In this document: positions 19,731 through 64,000 of the stretch, in pieces
Position numbering within the stretch: position 1 is the stretch's first letter
Layout: each line of letters opens with the position of its first letter
Source: Auanema rhodensis
Taxonomy: Eukaryota; Animalia; Nematoda
Reading direction: 5' to 3'
DNA length: 64,000 nucleotides
NCBI GenBank assembly: GCA_964057225.1
Contig: OZ059900.1
Span: 868,001-932,000 of the forward strand
Translations under genes and position numbers: made by a program
Notes under the pieces: generated by a model
The model's input: the letters and a program-made list of their open reading frames with translations, nothing else
Told to the model about the DNA's origin: nothing
The model's database searches: none

Positions 19731-19916
19731 TAATTTGGCTAAATCGCTCATATACATGATCAGAAGCATAGTTTCATTGTCTATGACAACAAAAGTCATC
19801 AATTAAACGCTAGTGATGTTTAAATACTGATTTTCGCTCAAATAGCATTACTACACTAAGTATGGTCGTTTTTATGCCTTTAACACCATATACTCACCGA
19901 TTTTTGGTACAAAATC

Positions 19917-20042
19917 TGTAATACTCGTAAATTTTGATCATTTTCGTTAAGATTTCACATTTGAAAATCAAACACACAATGAACAAAATCAGTCTATTTT
20001 TATGAGTTTGCACTGATATATATTCATTTTGATCAAAAAAGG
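19917..20042 (+). repeat. Truncated 126-bp marker monomer, copy 1 (7-bp insertion cacattt, ~228-bp deletion)
   Basis: gattt-cacattt-gaaaatc at 19951-19969, aatgaacaaaatc variant, and a jump aaaaaaggt|gtgatactcg at 20043. Confidence 0.93.
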
Positions 20043-23000: not shown

Positions 23001-24903
23001 ATATATAAGATCAAAAGCATAGTTTTATTGTCTATAACAACAAAAGTCATCAATTAAACGCTAGTGATGTTTAAATACTGAATTTCGCTCAAATAGCATT
23101 ACTACACTAAGTATGGTCGTTTTTATGCCTTTAACACCATATACTCACCGATTTTTGGTACAAAATCTGTAATACTCGTAAATTTTGTTCATATTCGTTA
23201 AGATTTGAGAATCAAACATACGATACACAAAATCAGTTTATTTTTACGAGTTTGCACTGATATTTATTCATTTTGATCAAAAAAGGTCGAAAATAGAAAG
23301 AATTTTTGAAATTTCCGAGTTTTGAGTCTAATTTGGCTAAATCGCTCATATATATGATCAGAAGCATAGTTTTATTGTCTATGACAACAAAAGTCATCAA
23401 TTAAACGCTAGTGATGTTTAAATACTGATTTTCGCTCAAATAGCATTACTACACTAAGTATGGTCGTTTTTATGCCTTTAACACCATATACTCACCGATT
23501 TTTGGTACAAAATCTGTAATACTCGTAAATTTTGATCATATTCGTTAAGATTTGAAAATCAAACACATAATACACGAAATAAGTCTATTTTTATGAGTTT
23601 GCACTGATATTTGTTTATTTTGATCAAAAAAGGTCGAAAATAGAAAGAATTTTTGAAATTTCCGAGTTTTGAGTCTAATTTGGCTAATTCGCTCATATAT
23701 ATGATCACAAGCATAGTTTTATTGTCTATGACAACAAAAATCATCAATTAAACGCTAGTGATGTTTAAATACTGATTTTCGCTCAAATAGCATTACTACA
23801 CTAAGTATGGTCGTTTTTATGCCTTTAACACCATATACTCACCGATTTTTGGTACAAAATCTGTAATACTCGTAAATTTTGATCATATTCGTTAAGATTT
23901 GAGAATCAAACATACGATACACGAAATAAGTTTATTTTTACGAGTTTGCACTGATATTTATTCATTTTGATCAAAAAAGGTCGAAAATAGAAAGAATTTT
24001 CGAAATTTCCGAGTTTTGAGTCTAATTTGGCTAAATCGCTCATATATATGATAAAAAGCATAGTTTTACTGTCTATGATAACAAAAGTCTTCAAATATAC
24101 ACTAATAATGATTAAATCACTGAATTTCAGTCAAATAGCATTACTACACTAAGTATGGTCGTTTTTATGCCTTTAACACCATATACTCACCGATTTTTGG
24201 TACAAAATCTGTAATACTTGTAAATTTTGATCATATTTGTTAAGATTTGAGAATCAAACACATAATACACGAAATAAGTCTATTTTTACAAGTTTGCACT
24301 GATATTTATTCATTTTGATCAAAAAAGGTCGAAAATAGAAAGAATTTTTGAAATTTCCGAGTTTTGAGTCCAATTTGGCTAAATCGCTCATATATAAGAT
24401 CAAAAGCATAGTTTTATTGTCTATAACAACAAAAGTCATCAATTAAACGCTAGTGATGTTTAAATACTGAATTTCGCTCAAATAGCATTACTACACTAAG
24501 TATGGTCGTTTTTATGCCTTTAACACCATATACTCACCGATTTTTGGTACAAAATCTGTAATACTTGTAAATTTTGATCATATTTGTTAAGATTCGAGAA
24601 TCAAACATACAATACACAAAATCAGTCTATTTTTATAAGCTTGCACTGATATATATTCATTTTGATCAAAAAAGGTCGAAAATAGAAAGAATTTTTGAAA
24701 TTTCCGAGTTTTGAGTCTAATTTGGCTAAATCGCTCATATACATGATCAGAAGCATAGTTTCATTGTCTATGACAACAAAAGTCATCAATTAAACGCTAG
24801 TGATGTTTAAATACTGATTTTCGCTCAAATAGCATTACTACACTAAGTATGGTCGTTTTTATGCCTTTAACACCATATACTCACCGATTTTTGGTACAAA
24901 ATC

Positions 24904-25029
24904 TGTAATACTCGTAAATTTTGATCATTTTCGTTAAGATTTCACATTTGAAAATCAAACACACAATGAACAAAATCAGTCTATTTTTATGAGTTTGCAC
25001 TGATATATATTCATTTTGATCAAAAAAGG
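24904..25029 (+). repeat. Truncated 126-bp marker monomer, copy 2
   Basis: Same insertion, substitutions and deletion junction as 19917-20042, offset 4987 bp. Confidence 0.93.
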
Positions 25030-40000: not shown

Positions 40001-42402
40001 CGTTAAGATTTGAAAATCAAACATACAATACGCAAAATCAGTCTATTTTTATGAGCTTGCACTGATATATATTCATTTTGATCAAAAAAGGTCGAAAATA
40101 GAAAGAATTTTTGAAATTTCCGAGTTTTGAGTCTAATTTGGCTAAATCGCTCATATATATGATCAAAAGCATAGTTTTATTGTCTATGACAACAAAAGTC
40201 ATCAATTAAACGCTAGTGATGTTTAAATACTGAATTTCGCTCAAATAGCATTACTACACTAAGTATGGTCGTTTTTATGCCTTTAACACCATATACTCAC
40301 CGATTTTTGGTACAAAATCTGTAATACTCGTAAATTTTGATCATATTCGTTAAGATTTGAGAATCAAACATACAATACACGAAATAAGTTTATTTTTACG
40401 AGTTTGCACTGATATTTATTCATTTTGATCAAAAAAGGTCGAAAATAGAAAGAATTTTTGAAATTTCCGAGTTTTGAGTCTAATTTGGCTAAATCGCTCA
40501 TATATATGATCAAAAGCATAGTTTTACTGTCTATGATAACAAAAGTCTTCAAATATACACTAATAATGATTTAATCACTGAATTTCACTCAAATAGCATT
40601 ACTACACTAAGTATGGTCGTTTTTATGCCTTTAACACCATATACTCACCGATTTTTGGTACAAAATCTGTGATACTCGTAAATTTCGATCATATTGGGTG
40701 AGATTCGAGAATCAAACACACAATACACGAAATAAGTTTATTTTTACGAGTTTGCACTGATATTTATTCATTTTGATCAAAAAAGGTCGAAAATAGAAAG
40801 AATTTTTGAAATTTCCGAGTTTTGAGTCTAATTTGGCTAAATCGCTCATATATATGATCAAAAGCATAGTTTTACTGTCTATGATAACAAAAGTCTTCAA
40901 ATATACACTAATAATGTGTAAATCACTGAATTTCACTCAAATAGCATTACTACACTAAGTATGGTCGTTTTTATGCCTTTAACACCATATACTCACCGAT
41001 TTTTGGTACAAAATCTGTGATACTCGTAAATTTCGATCATATTCGTTAAGATTCGAGAATCAAACACACAATACACGAAATGAGTTTATTTTCACGAGTT
41101 TGCACTGATATTTATTCATTTTGATCAAAAAAGGTCGAAATAAGAAAGAATTTTTGAATTTTCCGAGTTTTGAGTCCAATTTGGCTAAATCGCTCATATA
41201 TAAGATCAAAAGCATAGTTTTATTGTCTATAACAACAAAAGTCATCAATTAAACGCTAGTGATGTTTAAATACTGAATTTCGCTCAAATAGCATTACTAC
41301 ACTAAGTATGGTCGTTTTTATGCCTTTAACACCATATACTCACCGATTTTTGGTACAAAATCTGTAATACTCGTAAATTTTGATCATATTCGTTAAGATT
41401 TGAGAATCAAACATACAATACAAAAAATCAGTCTATTTTTATGAGCTTGCACTGATATATATTCATTTTGATCAAAAAAGGTCGAAAATAGAAAGAATTT
41501 TTGAAATTTCCGAGTTTTGAGTCTAATTTGGCTAAATCGCTCATATATATGATCAAAAGCATAGTTTTACTGTCTATGATAACAAAAGTCTTCAAATATA
41601 CACTAATAATGATTAAATCACTGAATTTCAGTCAAATAGCATTACTACACTAAGTATGGTCGTTTTTATGCCTTTAACACCATATACTCACCGATTTTTG
41701 GTACAAAATCTGTAATACTTGTAAATTTTGATCATATTTGTTAAGATTCGAGAATCAAACATACAATACACAAAATCAGTCTATTTTTATAAGCTTGCAC
41801 TGATATATATTCATTTTGATCAAAAAAGGTCGAAAATAGAAAGAATTTTTGAAATTTCCGAGTTTTGAGTCTAATTTGGCTAAATCGCTCATATACATGA
41901 TCAGAAGCATAGTTTCATTGTCTATGACAACAAAAGTCATCAATTAAACGCTAGTGATGTTTAAATACTGATTTTCGCTCAAATAGCATTACTACACTAA
42001 GTATGGTCGTTTTTATGCCTTTAACACCATATACTCACCGATTTTTGGTACAAAATCTGTAATACTCGTAAATTTTGATCATATTCGTTAAGATTTGAAA
42101 ATCAAACATACAATACGCAAAATCAGTCTATTTTTATGAGCTTGCACTGATATATATTCATTTTGATCAAAAAAGGTCGAAAATAGAAAGAATTTTTGAA
42201 ATTTCCGAGTTTTGAGTCTAATTTGGCTAAATCGCTCATATATATGATCAAAAGCATAGTTTTATTGTCTATGACAACAAAAGTCATCAATTAAACGCTA
42301 GTGATGTTTAAATACTGAATTTCGCTCAAATAGCATTACTACACTAAGTATGGTCGTTTTTATGCCTTTAACACCATATACTCACCGATTTTTGGTACAA
42401 AA
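28010..42402 (+). repeat. Nested higher-order repeat: 25-monomer offset (8688 bp) = 17-mer (5908 bp) plus an internal 8-mer duplication (2780 bp)
   Basis: 8688: 28201/36889, 29244/37932, 30287/38975, 30661/39349, 31676/40364, 32372/41060. 2780: 32372/35152, 34109/36889, 34825/37605, with private SNPs at 33716/36496 and 34937/37717. 5908: 28201/34109. Confidence 0.88.
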
Positions 42403-43209
42403 TCTGTAATACTCGTAAATTTTGATCATATTTGTTAAGATTTGAGAATCAAACATACAATACACAAAATCAGTCTATTTTTATGAGCTTGCACTGATAT
42501 ATATTCATTTTGATCAAAAAAGGTCGAAAATAGAAAGAATTTTTGAAATTTACGAGTTTTGAGTCTAATTTGGCTAAATCGCTCATATATATGATCAGAA
42601 GCATAGTTTTATTGTCTATGACAACAAAAGTGATTAGTTAAACACTAATGATGTTTAAATCACTAAATTTCGCTCAAATAGCATTACTACACTAAGTATG
42701 GTCGTTTTTATGCCTTTAACACCATATACTCACCGATTTTTGGTACAAAATCTGTAATACTTGTAAATTTTGATCATATTCGTTAAGATTCGAGAATCAA
42801 ACACATAATACACGAAATAAGTCTATTTTTATGAGTTTGCACTGATATTTATTCATTTTGATCAAAAAAGGTCGAAAATAGAAAGAATTTTTGAATTTTC
42901 CGAGTTTTGAGTCCAATTGGGCTAAATCGCTCATATATATGATCAAAAGCATAGTTTTACTGTCTATGATAACAAAAGTCTTCAAATATACACTAATAAT
43001 GATTTAATCACTGAATTTCACTCAAATAGCATTACTACACTAAGTATGGTCGTTTTTATGCCTTTAACACCATATACTCACCGATTTTTGGTACAAAATC
43101 TGTGATACTCGTAAATTTCGATCATATTGGGTGAGATTCGAGAATCAAACACACAATACACGAAATAAGTTTATTTTTACGAGTTTGCACTGATATTTAT
43201 TCATTTTGA

Positions 43210-45915
43210 TCAAAAAAGGTCGAAAATAGAAAGAATTTTTGAAATTTCCGAGTTTTGAGTCTAATTTGGCTAAATCGCTCATATATATGATCAAAAGCAT
43301 AGTTTTACTGTCTATGATAACAAAAGTCTTCAAATATACACTAATAATGTGTAAATCACTGAATTTCACTCAAATAGCATTACTACACTAAGTATGGTCG
43401 TTTTTATGCCTTTAACACCATATACTCACCGATTTTTGGTACAAAATCTGTGATACTCGTAAATTTTGATCATATTCGGTGAGATTCGAGGATCGAACAC
43501 ACAATACACGAAATAAGTTTATTTTTACGAGTTTGCACTGATATTTATTCATTTTTATCAAAAAAGGTCGAAAATAGAAAGAATTTTTGAAATTTCCGAG
43601 TTTTGAGTCTAATTTGGCTAAATCGCTCATATATATGATCAAACGCATAGTTTTACTGTCTATGATAACAGAAGTCTTCAAATATACACTAATAATGTGT
43701 AAATCACTGAATTTCACTCAATTAGCATTACTACACTAAGTATGGTCGTTTTTATGCCTTTAACACCATATACTCACCGATTTGTGGTACAAAATCTGTA
43801 ATACTCGTAAATTTTGATCATATTCGTTAAGATTTGAGAATCAAACATACAATACACAAAATCAGTCTATTTTTATAAGCTTGCACTGATATATATTCAT
43901 TTTGATCAAAAAAGGTCGAAAATAGAAAGAATTTTTGAAATTTCCGAGTTTTGAGTCTAATTTGGCTAAATCGCTCATATATATGATCAAAAGCATAGTT
44001 TTACTGTCTATGATAACAAAAGTCTTCAAATATACACTAATAATGATTAAATCACTGAATTTCACTCAAATAGCATTACTACACTAAGTATGGTCGTTTT
44101 TATGCCTTTAACACCATATACTCACCGATTTTTGGTACAAAATCTGTGATACTCGTAAATTTTGATCATATTCGGTGAGATTCGAGAATCAAACACACAA
44201 TACACGAAATAAGTTTATTTTTACGAGTTTGCACTGATATTTATTCATTTTGATCAAAAAAGGTCGAAAATAGAAAGAATTTTTGAAATTTCCGAGTTTT
44301 GAGTCTAATTTGGCTAAATCGCTCATATATATGATCAAAAGCATAGTTTTATTGTCTATGACAACAAAAGTCATCAATTAAACGCTAGTGATGTTTAAAT
44401 ACTGAATTTCGCTCAAATAGCATTACTACACTAAGTATGGTCGTTTTTATGCCTTTAACACCATATACTCACCGATTTTTGGTACAAAATCTGTAATACT
44501 CGTAAATTTTGATCATATTCGTTAAGATTTGAGAATCAAACATACAATACACAAAATCAGTCTATTTTTATGAGCTTGCACTGATATATATTCATTTTGA
44601 TCAAAAAAGGTCGAAAATAGAAAGAATTTTTGAAATTTCCGAGTTTTGAGTCTAATTTGGCTAAATCGCTCATATATATGATCAAAAGCATAGTTTTACT
44701 GTCTATGATAACAAAAGTCTTCAAATATACACTAATAATGTGTAAATCACTGAATTTCACTCAAATAGCATTACTACACTAAGTATGGTCGTTTTTATGC
44801 CTTTAACACCATATACTCACCGATTTTTGGTACAAAATCTGTGATACTCGTAAATTTTGATCATATTCGGTGAGATTCGAGGATCGAACACACAATACAC
44901 GAAATAAGTTTATTTTTACGAGTTTGCACTGATATTTATTCATTTTTATCAAAAAAGGTCGAAAATAGAAAGAATTTTTGAAATTTCCGAGTTTTGAGTC
45001 TAATTTGGCTAAATCGCTCATATATATGATCAAACGCATAGTTTTACTGTCTATGATAACAGAAGTCTTCAAATATACACTAATAATGTGTAAATCACTG
45101 AATTTCACTCAATTAGCATTACTACACTAAGTATGGTCGTTTTTATGCCTTTAACACCATATACTCACCGATTTTTGGTACAAAATCTGTAATACTCGTA
45201 AATTTTGATCATATTCGTTAAGATTTGAGAATCAAACATACAATACACAAAATCAGTCTATTTTTATAAGCTTGCACTGATATATATTCATTTTGATCAA
45301 AAAAGGTCGAAAATAGAAAGAATTTTTGAAATTTCCGAGTTTTGAGTCTAATTTGGCTAAATCGCTCATATATATGATCAAAAGCATAGTTTTACTGTCT
45401 ATGATAACAAAAGTCTTCAAATATACACTAATAATGATTAAATCACTGAATTTCACTCAAATAGCATTACTACACTAAGTATGGTCGTTTTTATGCCTTT
45501 AACACCATATACTCACCGATTTTTGGTACAAAATCTGTGATACTCGTAAATTTTGATCATATTCGGTGAGATTCGAGAATCAAACACACAATACACGAAA
45601 TAAGTTTATTTTTACGAGTTTGCACTGATATTTATTCATTTTGATCAAAAAAGGTCGAAAATAGAAAGAATTTTTGAAATTTCCGAGTTTTGAGTCTAAT
45701 TTGGCTAAATCGCTCATATATATGATCAAAAGCATAGTTTTATTGTCTATGACAACAAAAGTCATCAATTAAACGCTAGTGATGTTTAAATACTGAATTT
45801 CGCTCAAATAGCATTACTACACTAAGTATGGTCGTTTTTATGCCTTTAACACCATATACTCACCGATTTTTGGTACAAAATCTGTAATACTCGTAAATTT
45901 TGATCATATTCGTTA
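43210..45915 (+). repeat. 4-monomer duplication (1391 bp), approximate limits
   Basis: Offsets 43412/44803, 43862/45253 and 44189/45580 = 1391. The private variants acagaagtc and ctcaattagc occur in both copies. Confidence 0.85.
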
Positions 45916-47887
45916 AGAGTCGAGAATCAAACACATAATACACGAAATAAGTCTATTTTTATGAGTTTGCACTGATATTTATTCATTTTGATCAAAAAAG
46001 GTCGAAAATAGAAAGAATTTTTGAATTTTCCGAGTTTTGAGTCCAATTGGGCTAAATCGCTCATATATATGATCAAAAGCATAGTTTTACTGTCTATGAT
46101 AACAAAAGTCTTCAAATATACACTAATAATGATTAAATCACTGAATTTCACTCAAATAGCATTACTACACTAAGTATGGTCGTTTTTATGCCTTTAACAC
46201 CATATACTCACCGATTTTTGGTACAAAATCTGTGATACTCGTAAATTTTGATCATATTCGGTGAGATTCGAGAATCAAACACACAATACACGAAATAAGT
46301 TTATTTTTACGAGTTTGCACTGATATTTATTCATTTTGATCAAAAAAGGTCGAAAATAGAAAGAATTTTTGAAATTTCCGAGTTTTGAGTCTAATTTGGC
46401 TAAATCGCTCATATATATGATCAAAAGCATAGTTTTATTGTCTATGACAACAAAAGTCATCAATTAAACGCTAGTGATGTTTAAATACTGAATTTCGCTC
46501 AAATAGCATTACTACACTAAGTATGGTCGTTTTTATGCCTTTAACACCATATACTCACCGATTTTTGGTACAAAATCTGTAATACTCGTAAATTTTGATC
46601 ATATTCGTTAAGATTTGAGAATCAAACATACAATACACAAAATCAGTCTATTTTTATGAGCTTGCACTGATATATATTCATTTTGATCAAAAAAGGTCGA
46701 AAATAGAAAGAATTTTTGAAATTTACGAGTTTTGAGTCTAATTTGGCTAAATCGCTCATATATATGATCAGAAGCATAGTTTTATTGTCTATGACAACAA
46801 AAGTCATTAGTTAAACACTAATGATGTTTAAATCACTAAATTTCGCTCAAATAGCATTACTACACTAAGTATGGTCGTTTTTATGCCTTTAACACCATAT
46901 ACTCACCGATTTTTGGTACAAATCTGTGATACTCGTAAATTTTGATCATATTCGGTGAGATTCGAGAATCAAACACACAATACACGAAATAAGTTTATTT
47001 TTACGAGTTTGCACTGATATTTATTCATTTTGATCAAAAAAGGTCGAAAATAGAAAGAATTTTTGAAATTTCCGAGTTTTGAGTCTAATTTGGCTAAATC
47101 GCTCATATATATGATCAAAAGCATAGTTTTATTGTCTATGACAACAAAAGTCATCAATTAAACGCTAGTGATGTTTAAATACTGAATTTCGCTCAAATAG
47201 CATTACTACACTAAGTATGGTCGTTTTTATGCCTTTAACACCATATACTCACCGATTTTTGGTACAAAATCTGTAATACTCGTAAATTTTGATCATATTC
47301 GTTAAGATTTGAGAATCAAACATACAATACACAAAATCAGTCTATTTTTATGAGCTTGCACTGATATATATTCATTTTGATCAAAAAAGGTCGAAAATAG
47401 AAAGAATTTTTGAAATTTACGAGTTTTGAGTCTAATTTGGCTAAATCGCTCATATATATGATCAGAAGCATAGTTTTATTGTCTATGACAACAAAAGTCA
47501 TTAGTTAAACACTAATGATGTTTAAATCACTAAATTTCGCTCAAATAGCATTACTACACTAAGTATGGTCGTTTTTATGCCTTTAACACCATATACTCAC
47601 CGATTTTTGGTACAAAATCTGTAATACTTGTAAATTTTGATCATATTCGTTAAGAGTCGAGAATCAAACACATAATACACGAAATAAGTCTATTTTTATG
47701 AGTTTGCACTGATATTTATTCATTTTGATCAATAAAGGTCGAAAATAGAAAGAATTTTTGAATTTTCCGAGTTTTGAGTCCAATTGGGCTAAATCGCTCA
47801 TATATATGATCAAAAGCATAGTTTTACTGTCTATGATAACAAAAGTCTTCAAATATACACTAATAATGATTAAATCACTGAATTTCA

Positions 47888-47912
47888 CTCAAATAGCATT
47901 ACTACACTTGAG
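47888..47912. other. Left inversion junction: interrupted palindrome, 15-nt spacer, 1-bp microhomology
   Basis: ctcaa(47888-47892)-atagcattactacac-ttgag(47908-47912). Forward ...actacacT joins reverse Ttgagcgaaattc sharing T47908. Confidence 0.93.
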
Positions 47913-50900
47913 CGAAATTCAGTATTTAAACATCACTAGCGTTTAATTGATGACTTTTGTTGTCATAGACAATAAAACTATGCTTTTGATCATATATATG
48001 AGCGATTTAGCCAAATTAGACTCAAAACTCGGAAATTTCAAAAATTCTTTCTATTTTCGACCTTTTTTGATCAAAATGAATAAATATCAGTGCAAACTCG
48101 TAAAAATAAACTTATTTCGTGTATTGTGTGTTTGATTCTCGAATCTCACCGAATATGATCAAAATTTACGAGTATCACAGATTTTGTACCAAAAATCGGT
48201 GAGTATATGGTGTTAAAGGCATAAAAACGACCATACTTAGTGTAGTAATGCTATTTGAGTGAAATTCAGTGATTTAATCATTATTAGTGTATATTTGAAG
48301 ACTTTTGTTATCATAGACAGTAAAACTATGCTTTTGATCATATATATGAGCGATTTAGCCCAATTGGACTCAAAACTCGGAAAATTCAAAAATTCTTTCT
48401 ATTTTCGACCTTTTTTGATCAAAATGAATAAATATCAGTGCAAACTCATAAAAATAGACTTATTTCGTGTATTATGTGTTTGATTCTCGACTCTTAACGA
48501 ATATGATCAAAATTTACAAGTATTACAGATTTTGTACCAAAAATCGGTGAGTATATGGTGTTAAAGGCATAAAAACGACCATACTTAGTGTAGTAATGCT
48601 ATTTGAGCGAAATTCAGTATTTAAACATCACTAGCGTTTAATTGATGACTTTTGTTGTCATAGACAATAAAACTATGCTTTTGATCATATATATGAGCGA
48701 TTTAGCCAAATTAGACTCAAAACTCGGAAATTTCAAAAATTCTTTCTATTTTCGACCTTTTTTGATCAAAATGAATAAATATCAGTGCAAACTCGTAAAA
48801 ATAAACTTATTTCGTGTATTGTGTGTTTGATTCTCGAATCTCACCGAATATGATCAAAATTTACGAGTATCACAGATTTGTACCAAAAATCGGTGAGTAT
48901 ATGGTGTTAAAGGCATAAAAACGACCATACTTAGTGTAGTAATGCTATTTGAGCGAAATTTAGTGATTTAAACATCATTAGTGTTTAACTAATGACTTTT
49001 GTTGTCATAGACAATAAAACTATGCTTCTGATCATATATATGAGCGATTTAGCCAAATTAGACTCAAAACTCGTAAATTTCAAAAATTCTTTCTATTTTC
49101 GACCTTTTTTGATCAAAATGAATATATATCAGTGCAAGCTCATAAAAATAGACTGATTTTGTGTATTGTATGTTTGATTCTCAAATCTTAACGAATATGA
49201 TCAAAATTTACGAGTATTACAGATTTTGTACCAAAAATCGGTGAGTATATGGTGTTAAAGGCATAAAAACGACCATACTTAGTGTAGTAATGCTATTTGA
49301 GCGAAATTCAGTATTTAAACATCACTAGCGTTTAATTGATGACTTTTGTTGTCATAGACAATAAAACTATGCTTTTGATCATATATATGAGCGATTTAGC
49401 CAAATTAGACTCAAAACTCGGAAATTTCAAAAATTCTTTCTATTTTCGACCTTTTTTGATCAAAATGAATAAATATCAGTGCAAACTCGTAAAAATAAAC
49501 TTATTTCGTGTATTGTGTGTTTGATTCTCGAATCTCACCGAATATGATCAAAATTTACGAGTATCACAGATTTTGTACCAAAAATCGGTGAGTATATGGT
49601 GTTAAAGGCATAAAAACGACCATACTTAGTGTAGTAATGCTATTTGAGTGAAATTCAGTGATTTAATCATTATTAGTGTATATTTGAAGACTTTTGTTAT
49701 CATAGACAGTAAAACTATGCTTTTGATCATATATATGAGCGATTTAGCCCAATTGGACTCAAAACTCGGAAAATTCAAAAATTCTTTCTATTTTCGACCT
49801 TTTTTGATCAAAATGAATAAATATCAGTGCAAACTCATAAAAATAGACTTATTTCGTGTATTATGTGTTTGATTCTCGACTCTTAACGAATATGATCAAA
49901 ATTTACAAGTATTACAGATTTTGTACCAAAAATCGGTGAGTATATGGTGTTAAAGGCATAAAAACGACCATACTTAGTGTAGTAATGCTATTTGAGCGAA
50001 ATTTAGTGATTTAAACATCATTAGTGTTTAACTAATGACTTTTGTTGTCATAGACAATAAAACTATGCTTCTGATCATATATATGAGCGATTTAGCCAAA
50101 TTAGACTCAAAACTCGTAAATTTCAAAAATTCTTTCTATTTTCGACCTTTTTTGATCAAAATGAATATATATCAGTGCAAGCTCATAAAAATAGACTGAT
50201 TTTGTGTATTGTATGTTTGATTCTCAAATCTTAACGAATATGATCAAAATTTACGAGTATTACAGATTTTGTACCAAAAATCGGTGAGTATATGGTGTTA
50301 AAGGCATAAAAACGACCATACTTAGTGTAGTAATGCTATTTGAGCGAAATTCAGTATTTAAACATCACTAGCGTTTAATTGATGACTTTTGTTGTCATAG
50401 ACAATAAAACTATGCTTTTGATCATATATATGAGCGATTTAGCCAAATTAGACTCAAAACTCGTAAATTTCAAAAATTCTTTCTATTTTCGACCTTTTTT
50501 GATCAAAATGAATATATATCAGTGCAAGCTCATAAAAATAGACTGATTTTGTGTATTGTATGTTTGATTCTCAAATCTTAACGAAAATGATCAAAATTTA
50601 CGAGTATTACAGATTTTGTACCAAAAATCGGTGAGTATATGGTGTTAAAGGCATAAAAACGACCATACTTAGTGTAGTAATGCTATTTGAGCGAAAATCA
50701 GTATTTAAACATCACTAGCGTTTAATTGATGACTTTTGTTGTCATAGACAATGAAACTATGCTTCTGATCATGTATATGAGCGATTTAGCCAAATTAGAC
50801 TCAAAACTCGGAAATTTCAAAAATTCTTTCTATTTTCGACCTTTTTTGATCAAAATGAATATATATCAGTGCAAGCTTATAAAAATAGACTGATTTTGTG

Positions 50901-53900
50901 TATTGTATGTTTGATTCTCAAATCTTAACGAATATGATCAAAATTTACAAGTATTACAGATTTTGTACCAAAAATCGGTGAGTATATGGTGTTAAAGGCA
51001 TAAAAACGACCATACTTAGTGTAGTAATGCTATTTGAGCGAAATTTAGTGATTTAAACATCATTAGTGTTTAACTAATGACTTTTGTTGTCATAGACAAT
51101 AAAACTATGCTTCTGATCATATATATGAGCGATTTAGCCAAATTAGACTCAAAACTCGTAAATTTCAAAAATTCTTTCTATTTTCGACCTTTTTTGATCA
51201 AAATGAATAAATATCAGTGCAAACTCGTAAAAATAAACTTATTTCGTGTATTGTGTGTTTGATTCTCGAATCTCACCGAATATGATCAAAATTTACGAGT
51301 ATCACAGATTTGTACCAAAAATCGGTGAGTATATGGTGTTAAAGGCATAAAAACGACCATACTTAGTGTAGTAATGCTATTTGAGCGAAATTTAGTGATT
51401 TAAACATCATTAGTGTTTAACTAATGACTTTTGTTGTCATAGACAATAAAACTATGCTTCTGATCATATATATGAGCGATTTAGCCAAATTAGACTCAAA
51501 ACTCGTAAATTTCAAAAATTCTTTCTATTTTCGACCTTTTTTGATCAAAATGAATATATATCAGTGCAAGCTCATAAAAATAGACTGATTTTGTGTATTG
51601 TATGTTTGATTCTCAAATCTTAACGAAAATGATCAAAATTTACGAGTATTACAGATTTTGTACCAAAAATCGGTGAGTATATGGTGTTAAAGGCATAAAA
51701 ACGACCATACTTAGTGTAGTAATGCTATTTGAGCGAAAATCAGTATTTAAACATCACTAGCGTTTAATTGATGACTTTTGTTGTCATAGACAATGAAACT
51801 ATGCTTCTGATCATGTATATGAGCGATTTAGCCAAATTAGACTCAAAACTCGGAAATTTCAAAAATTCTTTCTATTTTCGACCTTTTTTGATCAAAATGA
51901 ATATATATCAGTGCAAGCTTATAAAAATAGACTGATTTTGTGTATTGTATGTTTGATTCTCAAATCTTAACGAATATGATCAAAATTTACGAGTATTACA
52001 GATTTTGTACCAAAAATCGGTGAGTATATGGTGTTAAAGGCATAAAAACGACCATACTTAGTGTAGTAAAGCTATTTGAGTGAAATTCAGTGATTTACAC
52101 ATTATTAGTGTATATTTGAAGACTTTTGTTATCATAGACAGTAAAACTATGCTTTTGATCATATATATGAGCGATTTAGCCAAATTAGACTCAAAACTCG
52201 GAAATTTCAAAAATTCTTTCTATTTTCGACCTTTTTTGATAAAAATGAATAAATATCAGTGCAAACTCGTAAAAATAAACTTATTTCGTGTATTGTGTGT
52301 TCGATCCTCGAATCTCACCGAATATGATCAAAATTTACGAGTATCACACCTTTTTTGATCAAAATGAATATATATCAGTGCAAACTCATAAAAATAGACT
52401 GATTTTGTTCATTGTGTGTTTGATTTTCAAATGTGAAATCTTAACGAAAATGATCAAAATTTACGAGTATTACAGATTTTGTACCAAAAATCGGTGAGTA
52501 TATGGTGTTAAAGGCATAAAAACGACCATACTTAGTGTAGTAATGCTATTTGAGCGAAATTCAGTATTTAAACATCACTAGCGTTTAATTGATGACTTTT
52601 GTTGTTATAGACAATAAAACTATGCTTCTGATCATGTATATGAGCGATTTAGTCAAATTAGACTCAAAACTCGGAAATTTCAAAAATTCTTTCTATTTTC
52701 GACCTTTTTTGATCAAAATGAATATATATCAGTGCAAGCTTATAAAAATAGACTGATTTTGTGTATTGTATGTTTGATTCTCGAATCTTAACAAATATGA
52801 TCAAAATTTACAAGTATTACAGATTTTGTACCAAAAATCGGTGAGTATATGGTGTTAAAGGCATAAAAACGACCATACTTAGTGTAGTAATGCTATTTGA
52901 GCGAAATTCAGTATTTAAACATCACTAGCGTTTAATTGATGACTTTTGTTGTTATAGACAATAAAACTATGCTTTTGATCTTATATATGAGCGATTTAGC
53001 CAAATTGGACTCAAAACTCGGAAATTTCAAAAATTCTTTCTATTTTCGACCTTTTTTGATCAAAATGAATAAATATCAGTGCAAACTTGTAAAAATAGAC
53101 TTATTTTGTGTATTATGTGTTTGATTCTCAAATCTTAACAAATATGATCAAAATTTACAAGTATTACAGATTTTGTACCAAAAATCGGTGAGTATATGGT
53201 GTTAAAGGCATAAAAACGACCATACTTAGTGTAGTAATGCTATTTGACTGAAATTCAGTGATTTAATCATTATTAGTGTATATTTGAAGACTTTTGTTAT
53301 CATAGACAGTAAAACTATGCTTTTTATCATATATATGAGCGATTTAGCCAAATTAGACTCAAAACTCGGAAATTTCGAAAATTCTTTCTATTTTCGACCT
53401 TTTTTGATCAAAGTGAATAAATATCAGTGCAAACTCGTAAAAATAAACTGATTTTGTGTATCGTATGTTTGATTCTCAAATCTTAACGAATATGATCAAA
53501 ATTTACGAGTATTACAGATTTTGTACCAAAAATCGGTGAGTATATGGTGTTAAAGGCATAAAAACGACCATACTTAGTGTAGTAATGCTATTTGAGCGAA
53601 AATCAGTATTTAAACATCACTAGCGTTTAATTGATGATTTTTGTTGTCATAGACAATAAAACTATGCTTGTGATCATATATATGAGCGAATTAGCCAAAT
53701 TAGACTCAAAACTCGGAAATTTCAAAAATTCTTTCTATTTTCGACCTTTTTTGATCAAAATGAATAAATATCAGTGCAAACTCGTAAAAATAAACTTATT
53801 TCGTGTATTGTGTGTTTGATTCTCGAATCTCACCGAATATGATCAAAATTTACGAGTATCACAGATTTGTACCAAAAATCGGTGAGTATATGGTGTTAAA

Positions 53901-56580
53901 GGCATAAAAACGACCATACTTAGTGTAGTAATGCTATTTGAGCGAAATTTAGTGATTTAAACATCATTAGTGTTTAACTAATGACTTTTGTTGTCATAGA
54001 CAATAAAACTATGCTTCTGATCATATATATGAGCGATTTAGCCAAATTAGACTCAAAATCGGAAATTTCAAAAATTCTTTCTATTTTCGACCTTTTTTGA
54101 TCAAAATGAATAAATATCAGTGCAAACTCGTAAAAATAAACTGATTTTGTGTATCGTATGTTTGATTCTCAAATCTTAACGAATATGATCAAAATTTACG
54201 AGTATTACAGATTTTGTACCAAAAATCGGTGAGTATATGGTGTTAAAGGCATAAAAACGACCATACTTAGTGTAGTAATGCTATTTGAGCGAAATTCAGT
54301 ATTTAAACATCACTAGCGTTTAATTGATGACTTTTGTTGTTATAGACAATAAAACTATGCTTTTGATCTTATATATGAGCGATTTAGCCAAATTGGACTC
54401 AAAACTCGGAAATTTCAAAAATTCTTTCTATTTTCGACCTTTTTTGATCAAAATGAATAAATATCAGTGCAAACTCATAAAAATAGACTTATTTCGTGTA
54501 TTATGTGTTTGATTCTCGAATCTTAACAAATTTGATCAAAATTTACAAGTATTACAGATTTTGTACCAAAAATCGGTGAGTATATGGTGTTAAAGGCATA
54601 AAAACGACCATACTTAGTGTAGTAATGCTATTTGAGCGAAAATCAGTATTTAAACATCACTAGCGTTTAATTGATGACTTTTGTTGTCATAGACAATAAA
54701 ACTATGCTTCTGATCATATATATGAGCGATTTAGCCAAATTAGACTCAAAACTCGGAAATTTCAAAAATTCTTTCTATTTTCGACCTTTTTTGATCAAAA
54801 TGAATATATATCAGTGCAAGCTCATAAAAATAGACTGATTTTTTGTATTGTATGTTTGATTCTCAAATCTTAACGAATATGATCAAAATTTACGAGTATT
54901 ACAGATTTTGTACCAAAAATCGGTGAGTATATGGTGTTAAAGGCATAAAAACGACCATACTTAGTGTAGTAATGCTATTTGAGCGAAATTCAGTATTTAA
55001 ACATCACTAGCGTTTAATTGATGACTTTTGTTGTTATAGACAATAAAACTATGCTTTTGATCTTATATATGAGCGATTTAGCCAAATTGGACTCAAAACT
55101 CGGAAATTTCAAAAATTCTTTCTATTTTCGACCTTTTTTGATCAAAATGAATAAATATCAGTGCAAACTTGTAAAAATAGACTTATTTCGTGTATTATGT
55201 GTTTGATTCTCGAATCTTAACAAATATGATCAAAATTTACAAGTATTACAGATTTTGTACCAAAAATCGGTGAGTATATGGTGTTAAAGGCATAAAAACG
55301 ACCATACTTAGTGTAGTAATGCTATTTGACTGAAATTCAGTGATTTAATCATTATTAGTGTATATTTGAAGACTTTTGTTATCATAGACAGTAAAACTAT
55401 GCTTTTGATCATATATATGAGCGATTTAGCCAAATTAGACTCAAAACTCGGAAATTTCAAAAATTCTTTCTATTTTCGACCTTTTTTGATCAAAATGAAT
55501 ATATATCAGTGCAAGCTCATAAAAATAGACTGATTTTTTGTATTGTATGTTTGATTCTCAAATCTTAACGAATATGATCAAAATTTACGAGTATTACAGA
55601 TTTTGTACCAAAAATCGGTGAGTATATGGTGTTAAAGGCATAAAAACGACCATACTTAGTGTAGTAATGCTATTTGAGCGAAATTCAGTATTTAAACATC
55701 ACTAGCGTTTAATTGATGACTTTTGTTGTTATAGACAATAAAACTATGCTTTTGATCTTATATATGAGCGATTTAGCCAAATTGGACTCAAAACTCGGAA
55801 ATTTCAAAAATTCTTTCTATTTTCGACCTTTTTTGATCAAAATGAATAAATATCAGTGCAAACTTGTAAAAATAGACTTATTTCGTGTATTATGTGTTTG
55901 ATTCTCGAATCTTAACAAATATGATCAAAATTTACAAGTATTACAGATTTTGTACCAAAAATCGGTGAGTATATGGTGTTAAAGGCATAAAAACGACCAT
56001 ACTTAGTGTAGTAATGCTATTTGACTGAAATTCAGTGATTTAATCATTATTAGTGTATATTTGAAGACTTTTGTTATCATAGACAGTAAAACTATGCTTT
56101 TGATCATATATATGAGCGATTTAGCCCAATTGGACTCAAAACTCGGAAAATTCAAAAATTCTTTCTATTTTCGACCTTTTTTGATCAAAATGAATAAATA
56201 TCAGTGCAAACTCGTGAAAATAAACTCATTTCGTGTATTGTGTGTTTGATTCTCGAATCTTAACGAATATGATCGAAATTTACGAGTATCACAGATTTTG
56301 TATTTGTACCGATTTACTAGCGTTTAATTGATGATTTTTGTTGTCATAGACAATAAAACTATGCTTCTGATCATATATATGAGCGATTTAGCCAAATTAG
56401 ACTCAAAACTAGGAAATTTCAAAAATTCTTTCTATTTTCGACCTTTTTTGATCAAAATGAATAAATATCAGTGCAAACTCATAAAAATAGACTTATTTCG
56501 TGTATTATGTGTTTGATTCTCGAATCTTAACGAATATGATCAAAATTTACAAGTATTACAGATTTTGTACCAAAAATCGG
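47909..56580 (-). repeat. Inverted satellite block (~8.7 kb, ~25 monomers)
   Basis: Monomers read cgaccatacttagtgtagtaatgctatttgag on + (reverse complement of the core). The recurrent ORF switches to the + strand from 47947 to 56516. Confidence 0.98.
52349..52474 (-). repeat. Truncated 126-bp marker monomer, copy 3 (inverted)
   Basis: gtatcacacc at 52341-52350 and aaatgtg at 52429-52435 are reverse complements of the deletion junction and insertion of copies 1 and 2. Confidence 0.93.
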
Positions 56581-56751
56581 TACAAATACAAAATCTGTGA
56601 TACTCGTAAATTTCGATCAGATTCGAGAATCAAACACACAATACACGAAATGAGTTTATTTTCACGAGTTTGCACTGATATTTATTCATTTTGATCAAAA
56701 AAGGTCGAAAATAGAAAGAATTTTTGAATTTTCCGAGTTTTGAGTCCAATT
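56128..56751. other. Right inversion junction: compound inverted repeat (arms 56128-56315 and 56574-56751) around a 258-bp partial monomer
   Basis: 56270-56315 (tgatcgaaatttacgagtatcacagattttgtatttgtaccgattt) is the exact reverse complement of 56574-56619. The arms share the rare aaatgagtttattttcacgag variant, and the right arm lacks 10 bp (tattcgttaa) at 56619/56620. Confidence 0.92.
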
Positions 56752-59700
56752 TGGCTAAATCGCTCATATATAAGATCAAAAGCATAGTTTTATTGTCTAT
56801 AACAACAAAAGTCATCAATTAAACGCTAGTGATGTTTAAATACTGAATTTCGCTCAAATAGCATTACTACACTAAGTATGGTCGTTTTTATGCCTTTAAC
56901 ACCATATACTCACCGATTTTTGGTACAAAATCTGTAATACTCGTAAATTTTGATCATATTCGTTAAGATTTGAGAATCAAACATACAATACAAAAAATCA
57001 GTCTATTTTTATGAGCTTGCACTGATATATATTCATTTTGATCAAAAAAGGTCGAAAATAGAAAGAATTTTTGAAATTTCCGAGTTTTGAGTCTAATTTG
57101 GCTAAATCGCTCATATATATGATCAAAAGCATAGTTTTACTGTCTATGATAACAAAAGTCTTCAAATATACACTAATAATGATTAAATCACTGAATTTCA
57201 GTCAAATAGCATTACTACACTAAGTATGGTCGTTTTTATGCCTTTAACACCATATACTCACCGATTTTTGGTACAAAATCTGTAATACTTGTAAATTTTG
57301 ATCATATTTGTTAAGATTCGAGAATCAAACACATAATACACGAAATAAGTCTATTTTTACAAGTTTGCACTGATATTTATTCATTTTGATCAAAAAAGGT
57401 CGAAAATAGAAAGAATTTTTGAAATTTCCGAGTTTTGAGTCCAATTTGGCTAAATCGCTCATATATAAGATCAAAAGCATAGTTTTATTGTCTATAACAA
57501 CAAAAGTCATCAATTAAACGCTAGTGATGTTTAAATACTGAATTTCGCTCAAATAGCATTACTACACTAAGTATGGTCGTTTTTATGCCTTTAACACCAT
57601 ATACTCACCGATTTTTGGTACAAAATCTGTAATACTTGTAAATTTCGATCATATTTGTTAAGATTCGAGAATCAAACACATAATACACGAAATAAGTCTA
57701 TTTTTACAAGTTTGCACTGATATTTATTCATTTTGATCAAAAAAGGTCGAAAATAGAAAGAATTTTTGAAATTTCCGAGTTTTGAGTCCAATTTGGCTAA
57801 ATCGCTCATATATATGATCAGAAGCATAGTTTTATTGTCTATGACAACAAAAATCATCAATTAAACGCTAGTGATGTTTAAATACTGATTTTCGCTCAAA
57901 TAGCATTACTACACTAAGTATGGTCGTTTTTATGCCTTTAACACCATATACTCACCGATTTTTGGTACAAAATCTGTAATACTCGTAAATTTTGATCATA
58001 TTCGTTAAGATTTGAGAATCAAACATACAATACAAAAAATCAGTCTATTTTTATGAGCTTGCACTGATATATATTCATTTTGATCAAAAAAGGTCGAAAA
58101 TAGAAAGAATTTTTGAAATTTCCGAGTTTTGAGTCTAATTTGGCTAAATCGCTCATATATATGATCAAAAGCATAGTTTTACTGTCTATGATAACAAAAG
58201 TCTTCAAATATACACTAATAATGATTAAATCACTGAATTTCAGTCAAATAGCATTACTACACTAAGTATGGTCGTTTTTATGCCTTTAACACCATATACT
58301 CACCGATTTTTGGTACAAAATCTGTAATACTTGTAAATTTTGATCATATTTGTTAAGATTCGAGAATCAAACACATAATACACGAAATAAGTCTATTTTT
58401 ACAAGTTTGCACTGATATTTATTCATTTTGATCAAAAAAGGTCGAAAATAGAAAGAATTTTTGAAGTTTCCGAGTTTTGAGTCCAATTTGGCTAAATCGC
58501 TCATATATAAGATCAAAAGCATAGTTTTATTGTCTATAACAACAAAAGTCATCAATTAAACGCTAGTGATGTTTAAATACTGAATTTCGCTCAAATAGCA
58601 TTACTACACTAAGTATGGTCGTTTTTATGCCTTTAACACCATATACTCACCGATTTTTGGTACAAAATCTGTAATACTCGTAAATTTTGATCATATTCGT
58701 TAAGATTTGAGAATCAAACATACAATACAAAAAATCAGTCTATTTTTATGAGCTTGCACTGATATATATTCATTTTGATCAAAAAAGGTCGAAAATAGAA
58801 AGAATTTTTGAAATTTCCGAGTTTTGAGTCTAATTTGGCTAAATCGCTCATATATATGATCAAAAGCATAGTTTTACTGTCTATGATAACAAAAGTCTTC
58901 AAATATACACTAATAATGATTAAATCACTGAATTTCAGTCAAATAGCATTACTACACTAAGTATGGTCGTTTTTATGCCTTTAACACCATATACTCACCG
59001 ATTTTTGGTACAAAATCTGTAATACTTGTAAATTTTGATCATATTTGTTAAGATTCGAGAATCAAACACATAATACACGAAATAAGTCTATTTTTACAAG
59101 TTTGCACTGATATTTATTCATTTTGATCAAAAAAGGTCGAAAATAGAAAGAATTTTTGAAATTTCCGAGTTTTGAGTCCAATTTGGCTAAATCGCTCATA
59201 TATAAGATCAAAAGCATAGTTTTATTGTCTATAACAACAAAAGTCATCAATTAAACGCTAGTGATGTTTAAATACTGAATTTCGCTCAAATAGCATTACT
59301 ACACTAAGTATGGTCGTTTTTATGCCTTTAACACCATATACTCACCGATTTTTGGTACAAAATCTGTAATACTTGTAAATTTCGATCATATTTGTTAAGA
59401 TTCGAGAATCAAACACATAATACACGAAATAAGTCTATTTTTACAAGTTTGCACTGATATTTATTCATTTTGATCAAAAAAGGTCGAAAATAGAAAGAAT
59501 TTTTGAAATTTCCGAGTTTTGAGTCCAATTTGGCTAAATCGCTCATATATATGATCAGAAGCATAGTTTTATTGTCTATGACAACAAAAATCATCAATTA
59601 AACGCTAGTGATGTTTAAATACTGATTTTCGCTCAAATAGCATTACTACACTAAGTATGGTCGTTTTTATGCCTTTAACACCATATACTCACCGATTTTT

Positions 59701-62700
59701 GGTACAAAATCTGTAATACTCGTAAATTTTGATCATATTCGTTAAGATTTGAGAATCAAACATACAATACAAAAAATCAGTCTATTTTTATGAGCTTGCA
59801 CTGATATATATTCATTTTGATCAAAAAAGGTCGAAAATAGAAAGAATTTTTGAAATTTCCGAGTTTTGAGTCTAATTTGGCTAAATCGCTCATATATATG
59901 ATCAAAAGCATAGTTTTACTGTCTATGATAACAAAAGTCTTCAAATATACACTAATAATGATTAAATCACTGAATTTCAGTCAAATAGCATTACTACACT
60001 AAGTATGGTCGTTTTTATGCCTTTAACACCATATACTCACCGATTTTTGGTACAAAATCTGTAATACTTGTAAATTTTGATCATATTTGTTAAGATTCGA
60101 GAATCAAACACATAATACACGAAATAAGTCTATTTTTACAAGTTTGCACTGATATTTATTCATTTTGATCAAAAAAGGTCGAAAATAGAAAGAATTTTTG
60201 AAATTTCCGAGTTTTGAGTCCAATTTGGCTAAATCGCTCATATATAAGATCAAAAGCATAGTTTTATTGTCTATAACAACAAAAGTCATCAATTAAACGC
60301 TAGTGATGTTTAAATACTGAATTTCGCTCAAATAGCATTACTACACTAAGTATGGTCGTTTTTATGCCTTTAACACCATATACTCACCGATTTTTGGTAC
60401 AAAATCTGTAATACTTGTAAATTTCGATCATATTTGTTAAGATTCGAGAATCAAACACATAATACACAAAATAAGTCTATTTTTACAAGTTTGCACTGAT
60501 ATTTATTCATTTTGATCAAAAAAGGTCGAAAATAGAAAGAATTTTTGAAATTTCCGAGTTTTGAGTCCAATTTGGCTAAATCGCTCATATATATGATCAG
60601 AAGCATAGTTTTATTGTCTATGACAACAAAAATCATCAATTAAACGCTAGTGATGTTTAAATACTGATTTTCGCTCAAATAGCATTACTACACTAAGTAT
60701 GGTCGTTTTTATGCCTTTAACACCATATACTCACCGATTTTTGGTACAAAATCTGTAATACTCGTAAATTTTGATCATATTCGTTAAGATTTGAGAATCA
60801 AACATACAATACAAAAAATCAGTCTATTTTTATGAGCTTGCACTGATATATATTCATTTTGATCAAAAAAGGTCGAAAATAGAAAGAATTTTTGAAATTT
60901 CCGAGTTTTGAGTCTAATTTGGCTAAATCGCTCATATATATGATCAAAAGCATAGTTTTACTGTCTATGATAACAAAAGTCTTCAAATATACACTAATAA
61001 TGATTAAATCACTGAATTTCAGTCAAATAGCATTACTACACTAAGTATGGTCGTTTTTATGCCTTTAACACCATATACTCACCGATTTTTGGTACAAAAT
61101 CTGTAATACTTGTAAATTTTGATCATATTTGTTAAGATTCGAGAATCAAACACATAATACACGAAATAAGTCTATTTTTACAAGTTTGCACTGATATTTA
61201 TTCATTTTGATCAAAAAAGGTCGAAAATAGAAAGAATTTTTGAAGTTTCCGAGTTTTGAGTCCAATTTGGCTAAATCGCTCATATATAAGATCAAAAGCA
61301 TAGTTTTATTGTCTATAACAACAAAAGTCATCAATTAAACGCTAGTGATGTTTAAATACTGAATTTCGCTCAAATAGCATTACTACACTAAGTATGGTCG
61401 TTTTTATGCCTTTAACACCATATACTCACCGATTTTTGGTACAAAATCTGTAATACTCGTAAATTTTGATCATATTCGTTAAGATTTGAGAATCAAACAT
61501 ACAATACAAAAAATCAGTCTATTTTTATGAGCTTGCACTGATATATATTCATTTTGATCAAAAAAGGTCGAAAATAGAAAGAATTTTTGAAATTTCCGAG
61601 TTTTGAGTCTAATTTGGCTAAATCGCTCATATATATGATCAAAAGCATAGTTTTACTGTCTATGATAACAAAAGTCTTCAAATATACACTAATAATGATT
61701 AAATCACTGAATTTCAGTCAAATAGCATTACTACACTAAGTATGGTCGTTTTTATGCCTTTAACACCATATACTCACCGATTTTTGGTACAAAATCTGTA
61801 ATACTTGTAAATTTTGATCATATTTGTTAAGATTCGAGAATCAAACACATAATACACGAAATAAGTCTATTTTTACAAGTTTGCACTGATATTTATTCAT
61901 TTTGATCAAAAAAGGTCGAAAATAGAAAGAATTTTTGAAATTTCCGAGTTTTGAGTCCAATTTGGCTAAATCGCTCATATATAAGATCAAAAGCATAGTT
62001 TTATTGGCTATAACAACAAAAGTCATCAATTAAACGCTAGTGATGTTTAAATACTGAATTTCGCTCAAATAGCATTACTACACTAAGTATGGTCGTTTTT
62101 ATGCCTTTAACACCATATACTCACCGATTTTTGGTACAAAATCTGTAATACTTGTAAATTTCGATCATATTTGTTAAGATTCGAGAATCAAACACATAAT
62201 ACACGAAATAAGTCTATTTTTACAAGTTTGCACTGATATTTATTCATTTTGATCAAAAAAGGTCGAAAATAGAAAGAATTTTTGAAATTTCCGAGTTTTG
62301 AGTCCAATTTGGCTAAATCGCTCATATATATGATCAGAAGCATAGTTTTATTGTCTATGACAACAAAAATCATCAATTAAACGCTAGTGATGTTTAAATA
62401 CTGATTTTCGCTCAAATAGCATTACTACACTAAGTATGGTCGTTTTTATGCCTTTAACACCATATACTCACCGATTTTTGGTACAAAATCTGTAATACTC
62501 GTAAATTTTGATCATATTCGTTAAGATTTGAGAATCAAACATACAATACAAAAAATCAGTCTATTTTTATGAGCTTGCACTGATATATATTCATTTTGAT
62601 CAAAAAAGGTCGAAAATAGAAAGAATTTTTGAAATTTCCGAGTTTTGAGTCTAATTTGGCTAAATCGCTCATATATATGATCAAAAGCATAGTTTTACTG

Positions 62701-64000
62701 TCTATGATAACAAAAGTCTTCAAATATACACTAATAATGATTAAATCACTGAATTTCAGTCAAATAGCATTACTACACTAAGTATGGTCGTTTTTATGCC
62801 TTTAACACCATATACTCACCGATTTTTGGTACAAAATCTGTAATACTTGTAAATTTTGATCATATTTGTTAAGATTCGAGAATCAAACACATAATACACA
62901 AAATAAGTCTATTTTTACAAGTTTGCACTGATATTTATTCATTTTGATCAAAAAAGGTCGAAAATAGAAAGAATTTTTGAAGTTTCCGAGTTTTGAGTCC
63001 AATTTGGCTAAATCGCTCATATATAAGATCAAAAGCATAGTTTTATTGTCTATAACAACAAAAGTCATCAATTAAACGCTAGTGATGTTTAAATACTGAA
63101 TTTCGCTCAAATAGCATTACTACACTAAGTATGGTCGTTTTTATGCCTTTAACACCATATACTCACCGATTTTTGGTACAAAATCTGTAATACTCGTAAA
63201 TTTTGATCATATTCGTTAAGATTTGAGAATCAAACATACAATACAAAAAATCAGTCTATTTTTATGAGCTTGCACTGATATATATTCATTTTGATCAAAA
63301 AAGGTCGAAAATAGAAAGAATTTTTGAAATTTCCGAGTTTTGAGTCTAATTTGGCTAAATCGCTCATATATATGATCAAAAGCATAGTTTTACTGTCTAT
63401 GATAACAAAAGTCTTCAAATATACACTAATAATGATTAAATCACTGAATTTCAGTCAAATAGCATTACTACACTAAGTATGGTCGTTTTTATGCCTTTAA
63501 CACCATATACTCACCGATTTTTGGTACAAAATCTGTAATACTTGTAAATTTTGATCATATTTGTTAAGATTCGAGAATCAAACACATAATACACGAAATA
63601 AGTCTATTTTTACAAGTTTGCACTGATATTTATTCATTTTGATCAAAAAAGGTCGAAAATAGAAAGAATTTTTGAAGTTTCCGAGTTTTGAGTCCAATTT
63701 GGCTAAATCGCTCATATATAAGATCAAAAGCATAGTTTTATTGTCTATAACAACAAAAGTCATCAATTAAACGCTAGTGATGTTTAAATACTGAATTTCG
63801 CTCAAATAGCATTACTACACTAAGTATGGTCGTTTTTATGCCTTTAACACCATATACTCACCGATTTTTGGTACAAAATCTGTAATACTCGTAAATTTTG
63901 ATCATATTCGTTAAGATTTGAGAATCAAACATACAATACAAAAAATCAGTCTATTTTTATGAGCTTGCACTGATATATATTCATTTTGATCAAAAAAGGT
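56581..64000 (+). repeat. Right satellite domain, forward orientation, homogeneous, built from three monomer types (B-A and B-A-C units)
   Basis: Forward core motif resumes. ORF offsets show periods of 695, 1042 and 1737 bp (57325/59062, 57672/59409, 60104/61841, 61146/62883). Confidence 0.96.

What the first reader, a model, noticed from the sequence alone, without database searches (positions are those of the whole stretch)
47909..56580. Inverted block is a compact mirror of the left array: candidate inverted triplication (forward/inverted/forward) inside a satellite
Seen: read from its right end on the minus strand, the 8.7-kb block runs through monomer variants in roughly the order they dominate the 47-kb left domain. 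The order is the aaatgagt/ttcacgag type (as at 861 and 6418), then taagatc/cagtc types (2-19 kb), the truncated marker (20 and 25 kb), then the tttacgag/aattggg/ggtacaaatc types (26-47 kb). The right domain restarts with the aaatgagt type followed by taagatc/cagtc types, and both junctions are interrupted palindromes. Established: a central inverted copy bounded by interrupted-palindrome junctions is the product structure of ODIRA in yeast, and related fold-back structures arise in DUP-TRP/INV-DUP and breakage-fusion-bridge events. Inference: an ancestral ~9-kb segment was triplicated with the middle copy inverted, the forward copies then expanded by tandem duplication, and the inverted copy stayed near ancestral size. 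It would be a fossil of the earlier array rather than a simple in-place inversion.
Basis: partly seen in the sequence, partly recalled or inferred. Interest (0 to 1): 0.85.

Follow-up and report, generated by a model that had tools for sequence, protein, structure and literature searches.

The report
Eroded inverted triplication in worm satellite
An 8.7-kb backwards block inside a germline-only repeat array of the roundworm Auanema rhodense is a mirror-ordered copy of its neighbours, most likely the worn scar of DNA copying that folded back twice; this kind of rearrangement is well known and common in this genome.

Summary
The window is all 347/348-bp XT-1 satellite of Auanema rhodense; the published FISH probe matches 175 times. 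The inverted block (47908-56581) is real. Its monomer order follows the left array far better than shuffles (0/5000; block shuffles p 0.002-0.007 or lower). Flipping it back does not give a seamless array, and both junctions are hairpins in monomer phase.

It is not a compact mirror of all 47 kb. It tracks about 2-13, 17-27.7 and 45.8-47.3 kb, while 28-44 kb is mostly absent. The block also has internal repeats, foreign-type patches and a secondary 188-bp inverted copy of the right junction, so it is no untouched fossil.

Best reading (0.6): an eroded inverted triplication formed by two template switches. ODIRA membership is not met at the left junction (1-bp repeat). The third copy is not visible past its first part, and no contig listed spanned the right junctions. 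The scan has noted many similar fold-backs elsewhere in this genome, and (unchecked) the same nested junction about 26.6 kb downstream. Known kind, modest interest.

The parts
1..47908 (+). Left forward array of XT-1 satellite, 135 full monomers of 347/348 bp, with many young tandem duplications
17029..21240 (+). Left copy 1 of the block's 4.2-kb core, including the truncated-monomer marker at about 20027-20043
22016..26227 (+). Left copy 2 of the core; identical to copy 1 over 4209 bp (offset 4987), duplicated after the split from the block
45893..47280 (+). Left arm of the 1388-bp exact mirror tract, in register with the left junction
47888..47912 (.). Left junction L: forward strand ends at monomer phase 52, inverted strand starts at phase 36; 1-bp overlap, 5-bp arms, 15-nt loop; the arms belong to different monomer types
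47908..56581 (-). Inverted block of about 25 monomer lengths (22 full monomers plus partial ones)
48519..49906 (-). Block arm of the 1388-bp exact mirror tract; longest of 167 mirror diagonals
51151..55361 (-). Core of the block, collinear with 17.0-21.2 and 22.0-26.2 kb (28 substitutions and 3 one-base indels against copy 1); three alleles private to the block
53691..54058 (-). 368-bp patch identical to a later monomer type (20890, 25877, 46730): probable conversion tract inside the core
56128..56315 (-). J1': secondary inverted copy of 56574-56751 (right junction plus the following monomer head); in-register join at about 56127, blunt join at 56315/56316; keeps 10 bp that the right arm lacks
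56316..56573 (-). 258-bp remnant of the block's first monomer between J1' and J1; at least 5 differences from any forward monomer
56564..56597 (.). Right junction J1: fold-back at the monomer's own 3-bp inverted repeat (ACC/GGT, 7-nt loop), 8-bp stem, then a 6-bp tandem duplication
56587..64000 (+). Right forward array; starts inside the aaatgagt-type monomer (10-bp deletion at 56618/56619), then only early monomer types in two- and three-monomer repeats

Best explanation
The block is the middle, inverted copy of an old inverted triplication of a segment of a few kilobases (at most about 9 kb) of XT-1 satellite on the germline-restricted X of Auanema rhodense. Inferred mechanism: DNA synthesis folded back near the segment's end (L), copied the segment backwards, folded back again at a 3-bp hairpin near its start (J1), and resumed forwards. 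Afterwards (order partly shown) the left copy grew by tandem duplications and took in copies of flanking monomer types. The block gained smaller internal repeats and conversion patches. Both palindrome centres were eroded: the inner 610 bp at L no longer match, and a break near J1 was patched by copying 188 bp from the mirror arm (J1'). Shown: geometry, collinearity, junction sequences, and the block branching before the 4987-bp duplication. Inferred: a single event, the enzymology, and a full third copy.
For: Collinearity beyond shuffles. Each block end matches its own neighbour: 1388 bp exact on the left-junction diagonal, rank 1 of 167; on the right, about 1.2 kb (56126-54895) with one mismatch to 58142-59373. 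The flip test fails. Both junctions are near fold-backs in monomer phase, roughly 0.001-0.006 by chance under uniform phases. A run of monomer types that flanks the segment in the left array (at 4.2-6.3, 30-32 and 39-41 kb) is largely missing from the block (17-18% near-identical in those bins), as expected of sequence outside a triplicated segment. Three left-only and three block-only alleles in the core, with the left copies identical to each other. J1 and J1' both lack a 2-bp variant carried by all five left copies of that monomer type. Short microhomology or templated insertions at junctions are usual for human inverted triplications (PMC11293582), and erosion of palindromic junctions is described (PMC10766186).
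Against: The right domain shows only early types up to 64000, so the third copy is unproven. At both junctions the innermost arms are different monomer types (identical for only 5 bp at L and 8 plus 11 bp at J1), which needs later erosion or re-priming on another monomer. The left array has a recurring large-scale order of types, so order alone cannot exclude an inversion of one such unit, and one rotation of the block scores equally. No listed contig bridges J1 or J1', and no run holds all sampled words of L.
Confidence: 0.6

Rival explanations
1. In-place inversion of one unit of a pre-existing large higher-order repeat, with deletions at both breakpoints, followed by arm-to-arm conversion that made each end resemble its neighbour.
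For: The left array does cycle from late types through the aaatgagt type to early types several times. Conversion is evident (368-bp patch, J1', 1388-bp in-register tract).
Against: The breakpoints are not reciprocal (38 and 62 bp missing modulo 347), and the flipped neighbours were not found for those types in the forward arrays. It would need deletions of several monomers of the same linker at both ends. Both junctions being near hairpins in phase is unexplained.
Confidence: 0.17
2. Two separate fold-back inverted duplications (break repair or breakage-fusion-bridge-like rounds) rather than one triplication; the right domain is not a full third copy and the block is a mosaic of both neighbours.
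For: Block ends match their neighbours exactly over about 1 kb while the core is older. Other notes describe zig-zag and double fold-back cases in this genome (unchecked).
Against: The core runs continuously from early through marker to late types with no internal inversion junction. No telomere-repeat healing is present in the window.
Confidence: 0.15
3. Assembly artefact: chimeric long reads or a mis-join of similar satellite paths.
For: No independent read support was obtained. Germline repeats have only about 29-fold HiFi coverage (bioRxiv 10.64898/2026.08.27.747507).
Against: The block carries private alleles and differs from every forward copy. J1 exists twice, the two copies differing by a 10-bp deletion. 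An artefactual fold-back would give identical inner arms, and these differ within 5 bp of L. The runs laid were short contigs that drop rare joints, so their blank is weak.
Confidence: 0.08

Closest known systems
ODIRA inverted triplication (yeast SUL1; PMC10766183, PMC10766186)
   Same: Forward/inverted/forward layout; both junctions are interrupted palindromes; J1 sits on a pre-existing 3-bp inverted repeat; later erosion of the palindrome centres.
   Different: L has only a 1-bp repeat; loops of 7 and 15 nt against the typical 40-80; J1 has a 6-bp duplication; the inner arms are different monomers; a replication origin cannot be tested.
DUP-TRP/INV-DUP (human; PMC11293582)
   Same: Inverted middle copy; junctions with 1-3 bp microhomology or a short insertion; forward copies appear to extend about 1.0 and 1.4 kb beyond the inverted copy on the best-matching diagonals.
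   Different: No pair of long inverted low-copy repeats starts the event; kilobase rather than tens to hundreds of kilobases; lies in satellite DNA.
Satellite macro-dyad symmetries of Tribolium (PMC13081366)
   Same: Multi-kilobase subarrays of opposite orientation inside a satellite array.
   Different: There the inversion sites are conserved in thousands of copies; here J1 is seen twice in the window (perhaps again downstream) and L once.
XT-1 X-terminal eliminated tandem repeat of Auanema rhodense (bioRxiv 10.64898/2026.08.27.747507)
   Same: The 28-nt FISH probe matches 175 times exactly.
   Different: A search of the paper's main text for inversions found no description of orientation switches inside the arrays.

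Membership tests
XT-1 satellite of Auanema rhodense | Carries the published XT-1 probe sequence in tandem monomers | tested here: met
   175 exact matches, 0 expected by chance
XT-1 satellite of Auanema rhodense | Lies in an X-terminal block eliminated from the soma | not testable with these tools
   Taken from the family name in the paper; the window's position is not given
ODIRA inverted triplication | Central inverted copy between two direct copies of the same segment | tested here: inconclusive
   Left copy and inverted copy are collinear; the right copy shows only its first part within the window
ODIRA inverted triplication | Both junctions at pre-existing interrupted inverted repeats of 2-14 bp | tested here: not met
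   J1 uses a 3-bp repeat but carries a 6-bp duplication; L has 1 bp (criterion). L may be a secondary junction.
ODIRA inverted triplication | Arms of the repeats within about 100 bp of each other | tested here: inconclusive
   Loops of 15 and 7 nt in monomer phase, but the inner arms are different monomer types; best exact matches imply about 1.0-1.4 kb spacers or later erosion
ODIRA inverted triplication | Replication origin inside the amplified segment | not testable with these tools
   No origin map for this species is at hand
DUP-TRP/INV-DUP | Junction 1 formed within a pair of long inverted low-copy repeats | tested here: not met
   Both primary junctions have 1-3 bp overlap; no homologous inverted crossover is seen
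DUP-TRP/INV-DUP | Junction 2 with short microhomology, blunt end or templated insertion | tested here: met
   L 1 bp; J1 3 bp plus 6-bp duplication
Tribolium-type macro-dyad symmetry | Kilobase subarrays in opposite orientation | tested here: met
Tribolium-type macro-dyad symmetry | Conserved inversion sites repeated in many copies genome-wide | tested here: inconclusive
   J1 twice and L once in the window; no listed contig carries J1; a second nested junction downstream is an unchecked note

The most novel reading that the evidence does not exclude
The triplication's two junctions became part of a larger unit of about 26.6 kb that was itself duplicated (forward/inverted/forward/inverted/forward), and the palindrome arms are converted in register through hairpin pairing. 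That would show at base resolution how one fold-back event seeds repeated macro-dyads in a germline-restricted, rarely recombining X satellite.
Probability: 0.25. Interest if true: 0.5.

Novelty: new member of a known kind. Interest (0 to 1): 0.3.

Why it matters
Orientation switches in satellite arrays are usually called inversions. Here monomer variants show that the reversed block is a copy, give a partial order of events, and record how palindrome centres are worn down. The A. rhodense X recombines only in females, so this is a fair example of turnover within one chromosome. It adds a worked case, not a new mechanism, and implies no function: the DNA belongs to a repeat family eliminated from the soma.

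Tried and rejected
In-silico flip with three breakpoint choices: never seamless. Monomer tree: block monomers scatter among left and right ones (19 label changes against 18.6 shuffled), which fits copying but dates nothing because monomers are mosaics. Run search on the left junction: best holders have 6 of 8 words, which cannot tell junction words from ordinary monomer words. Considered that the whole block was copied from a template already holding J1, with its true end at 56315. Rejected as less economical: apart from the 188-bp patch, the block end aligns to the early three-monomer repeat on through the 258-bp remnant. Telomere healing: no TTAGGC in the window. No earlier notes near position 1, so nothing is known about upstream sequence. 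Polymerase-theta-type joining was considered for the short junction insertion (own knowledge; one search listed papers that I did not read), so it stays a suggestion.

Full report
Identity. The window is one AT-rich satellite of 347/348 bp from end to end. Earlier notes pointed to a roundworm with germline-only DNA. The Auanema rhodense paper (bioRxiv 10.64898/2026.08.27.747507) prints a 28-nt FISH probe for XT-1, an X-terminal eliminated repeat. That probe matches 175 times here with none expected by chance. The assembly in that paper is HiFi plus Hi-C of an inbred line, with about 29-fold coverage on repeats.

Observation. Monomers run forward over 1-47908, backward over 47908-56581 and forward again from about 56587. 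Assigning the 22 full block monomers, read on the minus strand, to left monomers in increasing order costs 48 differences. Shuffles cost 116+-15 (none of 5000 as low) and the reversed order costs 159. Shuffling in blocks of 2-6 monomers reaches the observed cost in at most 0.75% of trials, although one circular rotation ties it. The path uses 2-3 kb (equivalent types recur at 7-13 kb), then 17.4-29 kb, then 45.8-46.5 kb. It is not a miniature of the whole left domain. Only 39% of left monomers have a near-identical block partner, and 17-18% in 4-8 and 28-44 kb.

Not an in-place inversion. Flipping the block leaves 38 bp missing at one breakpoint and 62 bp at the other, modulo the monomer. The monomer ends that would become neighbours are of types not found in that context in the forward arrays. 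Instead each block end matches the array beside it. The longest exact mirror match, 1388 bp (45893-47280 with 48519-49906), lies within 1 bp of the left-junction diagonal and ranks first of 167. On the right, 56126-54895 matches 58142-59373 with one mismatch.

Junctions. L joins phase 52 forward to phase 36 backward with a 1-bp overlap: 5-bp arms and a 15-nt loop, beyond which the arms are different monomer types for about 610 bp. J1 folds back on the monomer's own ACC/GGT repeat with a 7-nt loop and an 8-bp stem, then repeats 6 bp and continues in a different monomer type. Two such near fold-backs in phase have a chance of roughly 0.001-0.006 if phases were uniform. So the junctions were probably either true local fold-backs whose inner arms were later altered, or short snap-backs that re-primed on another monomer. 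The data do not separate these. J1 is also copied, inverted, at 56128-56315 (J1'), 258 bp away. This copy is identical to the right arm except for 10 bp that only the right arm lacks. It joins in register at one end and bluntly at the other, and replaces the head of one monomer in an otherwise continuous early-type repeat. I read it as a later repair patch copied from the mirror arm (inference).

Order of events. The 4.2-kb core (51151-55361) aligns to both 17.0-21.2 and 22.0-26.2 kb, which are identical to each other over 4209 bp. Three rare alleles shared by the left copies (17170, 18201, 20355) are absent from the block, and three alleles are private to the block. Likewise J1 and J1' lack a 2-bp variant found in all five left copies of that monomer type. 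About 7 x 10^-4 changes per site per lineage would be of the order of 10^5 generations at a C. elegans-like mutation rate (rate from my own knowledge; rough). The block has itself changed: exact internal repeats of 721, 707, 544 and 530 bp and a 368-bp patch of a later type. It is thus only partly a fossil.

What could not be shown. The right domain holds only early types to 64000. Public runs gave short contigs; none of the listed pieces bridges J1 or J1', and the word search on L was ambiguous. Two unchecked notes place another, shorter inverted block with a mirror tract of about 1.38 kb and a nested junction 14-19 kb past the window's end, about 26.6 kb from this one by my arithmetic. If those are copies of L and J1, the right domain does reach the late types and the two-junction unit was duplicated. 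I could not read that DNA.

Comparison. It works like an inverted triplication with eroded palindromic junctions (PMC10766186). It does not meet the ODIRA junction rule of 2-14 bp pre-existing repeats at L (PMC10766183). It lacks the long inverted repeats that start human DUP-TRP/INV-DUP, though its short-homology junctions resemble their second junctions (PMC11293582). Opposed satellite subarrays are described as macro-dyads in Tribolium (PMC13081366). The scan lists many fold-back and triplication-like switches in other arrays of this genome.

Verdict. A real, well-resolved instance of a known kind of rearrangement. Triplication 0.6, inversion with conversion 0.17, separate fold-backs 0.15, artefact 0.08. 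Interest 0.3.

Noticed in passing
window 4401-6893, 30355-32094, 39043-41535: A run of several monomers is identical over 2493 bp at a distance of 34.6 kb and over 1740 bp at 26.0 kb: long-range copying or a 26-35 kb super-period in the left array.
   Followed up: partly
window 1-2731/5558-8288, 32158-35008/34938-37788, 29490-32094/38178-40782: Young exact duplications at offsets of 5557, 2780 and 8688 bp (16, 8 and 25 monomers).
   Followed up: no
window 56822-64000: The right domain is built from only three or four monomer types in two- and three-monomer repeats; one rare allele is shared with 12513 and 13207 but not with the block.
   Followed up: partly
window 56262-56660: Runs X2 and X5 hold contigs with many other joints and loose ends of this monomer, which suggests numerous further rearrangement junctions in the family. 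Runs labelled as two other organisms also hold some words of the repeat.
   Followed up: no
about 14-19 kb beyond the window's end: Unchecked notes report a second, shorter inverted block with a nested junction 10 bp longer than this one (634 against 624 letters), which would fit a copy without the 10-bp deletion.
   Followed up: no
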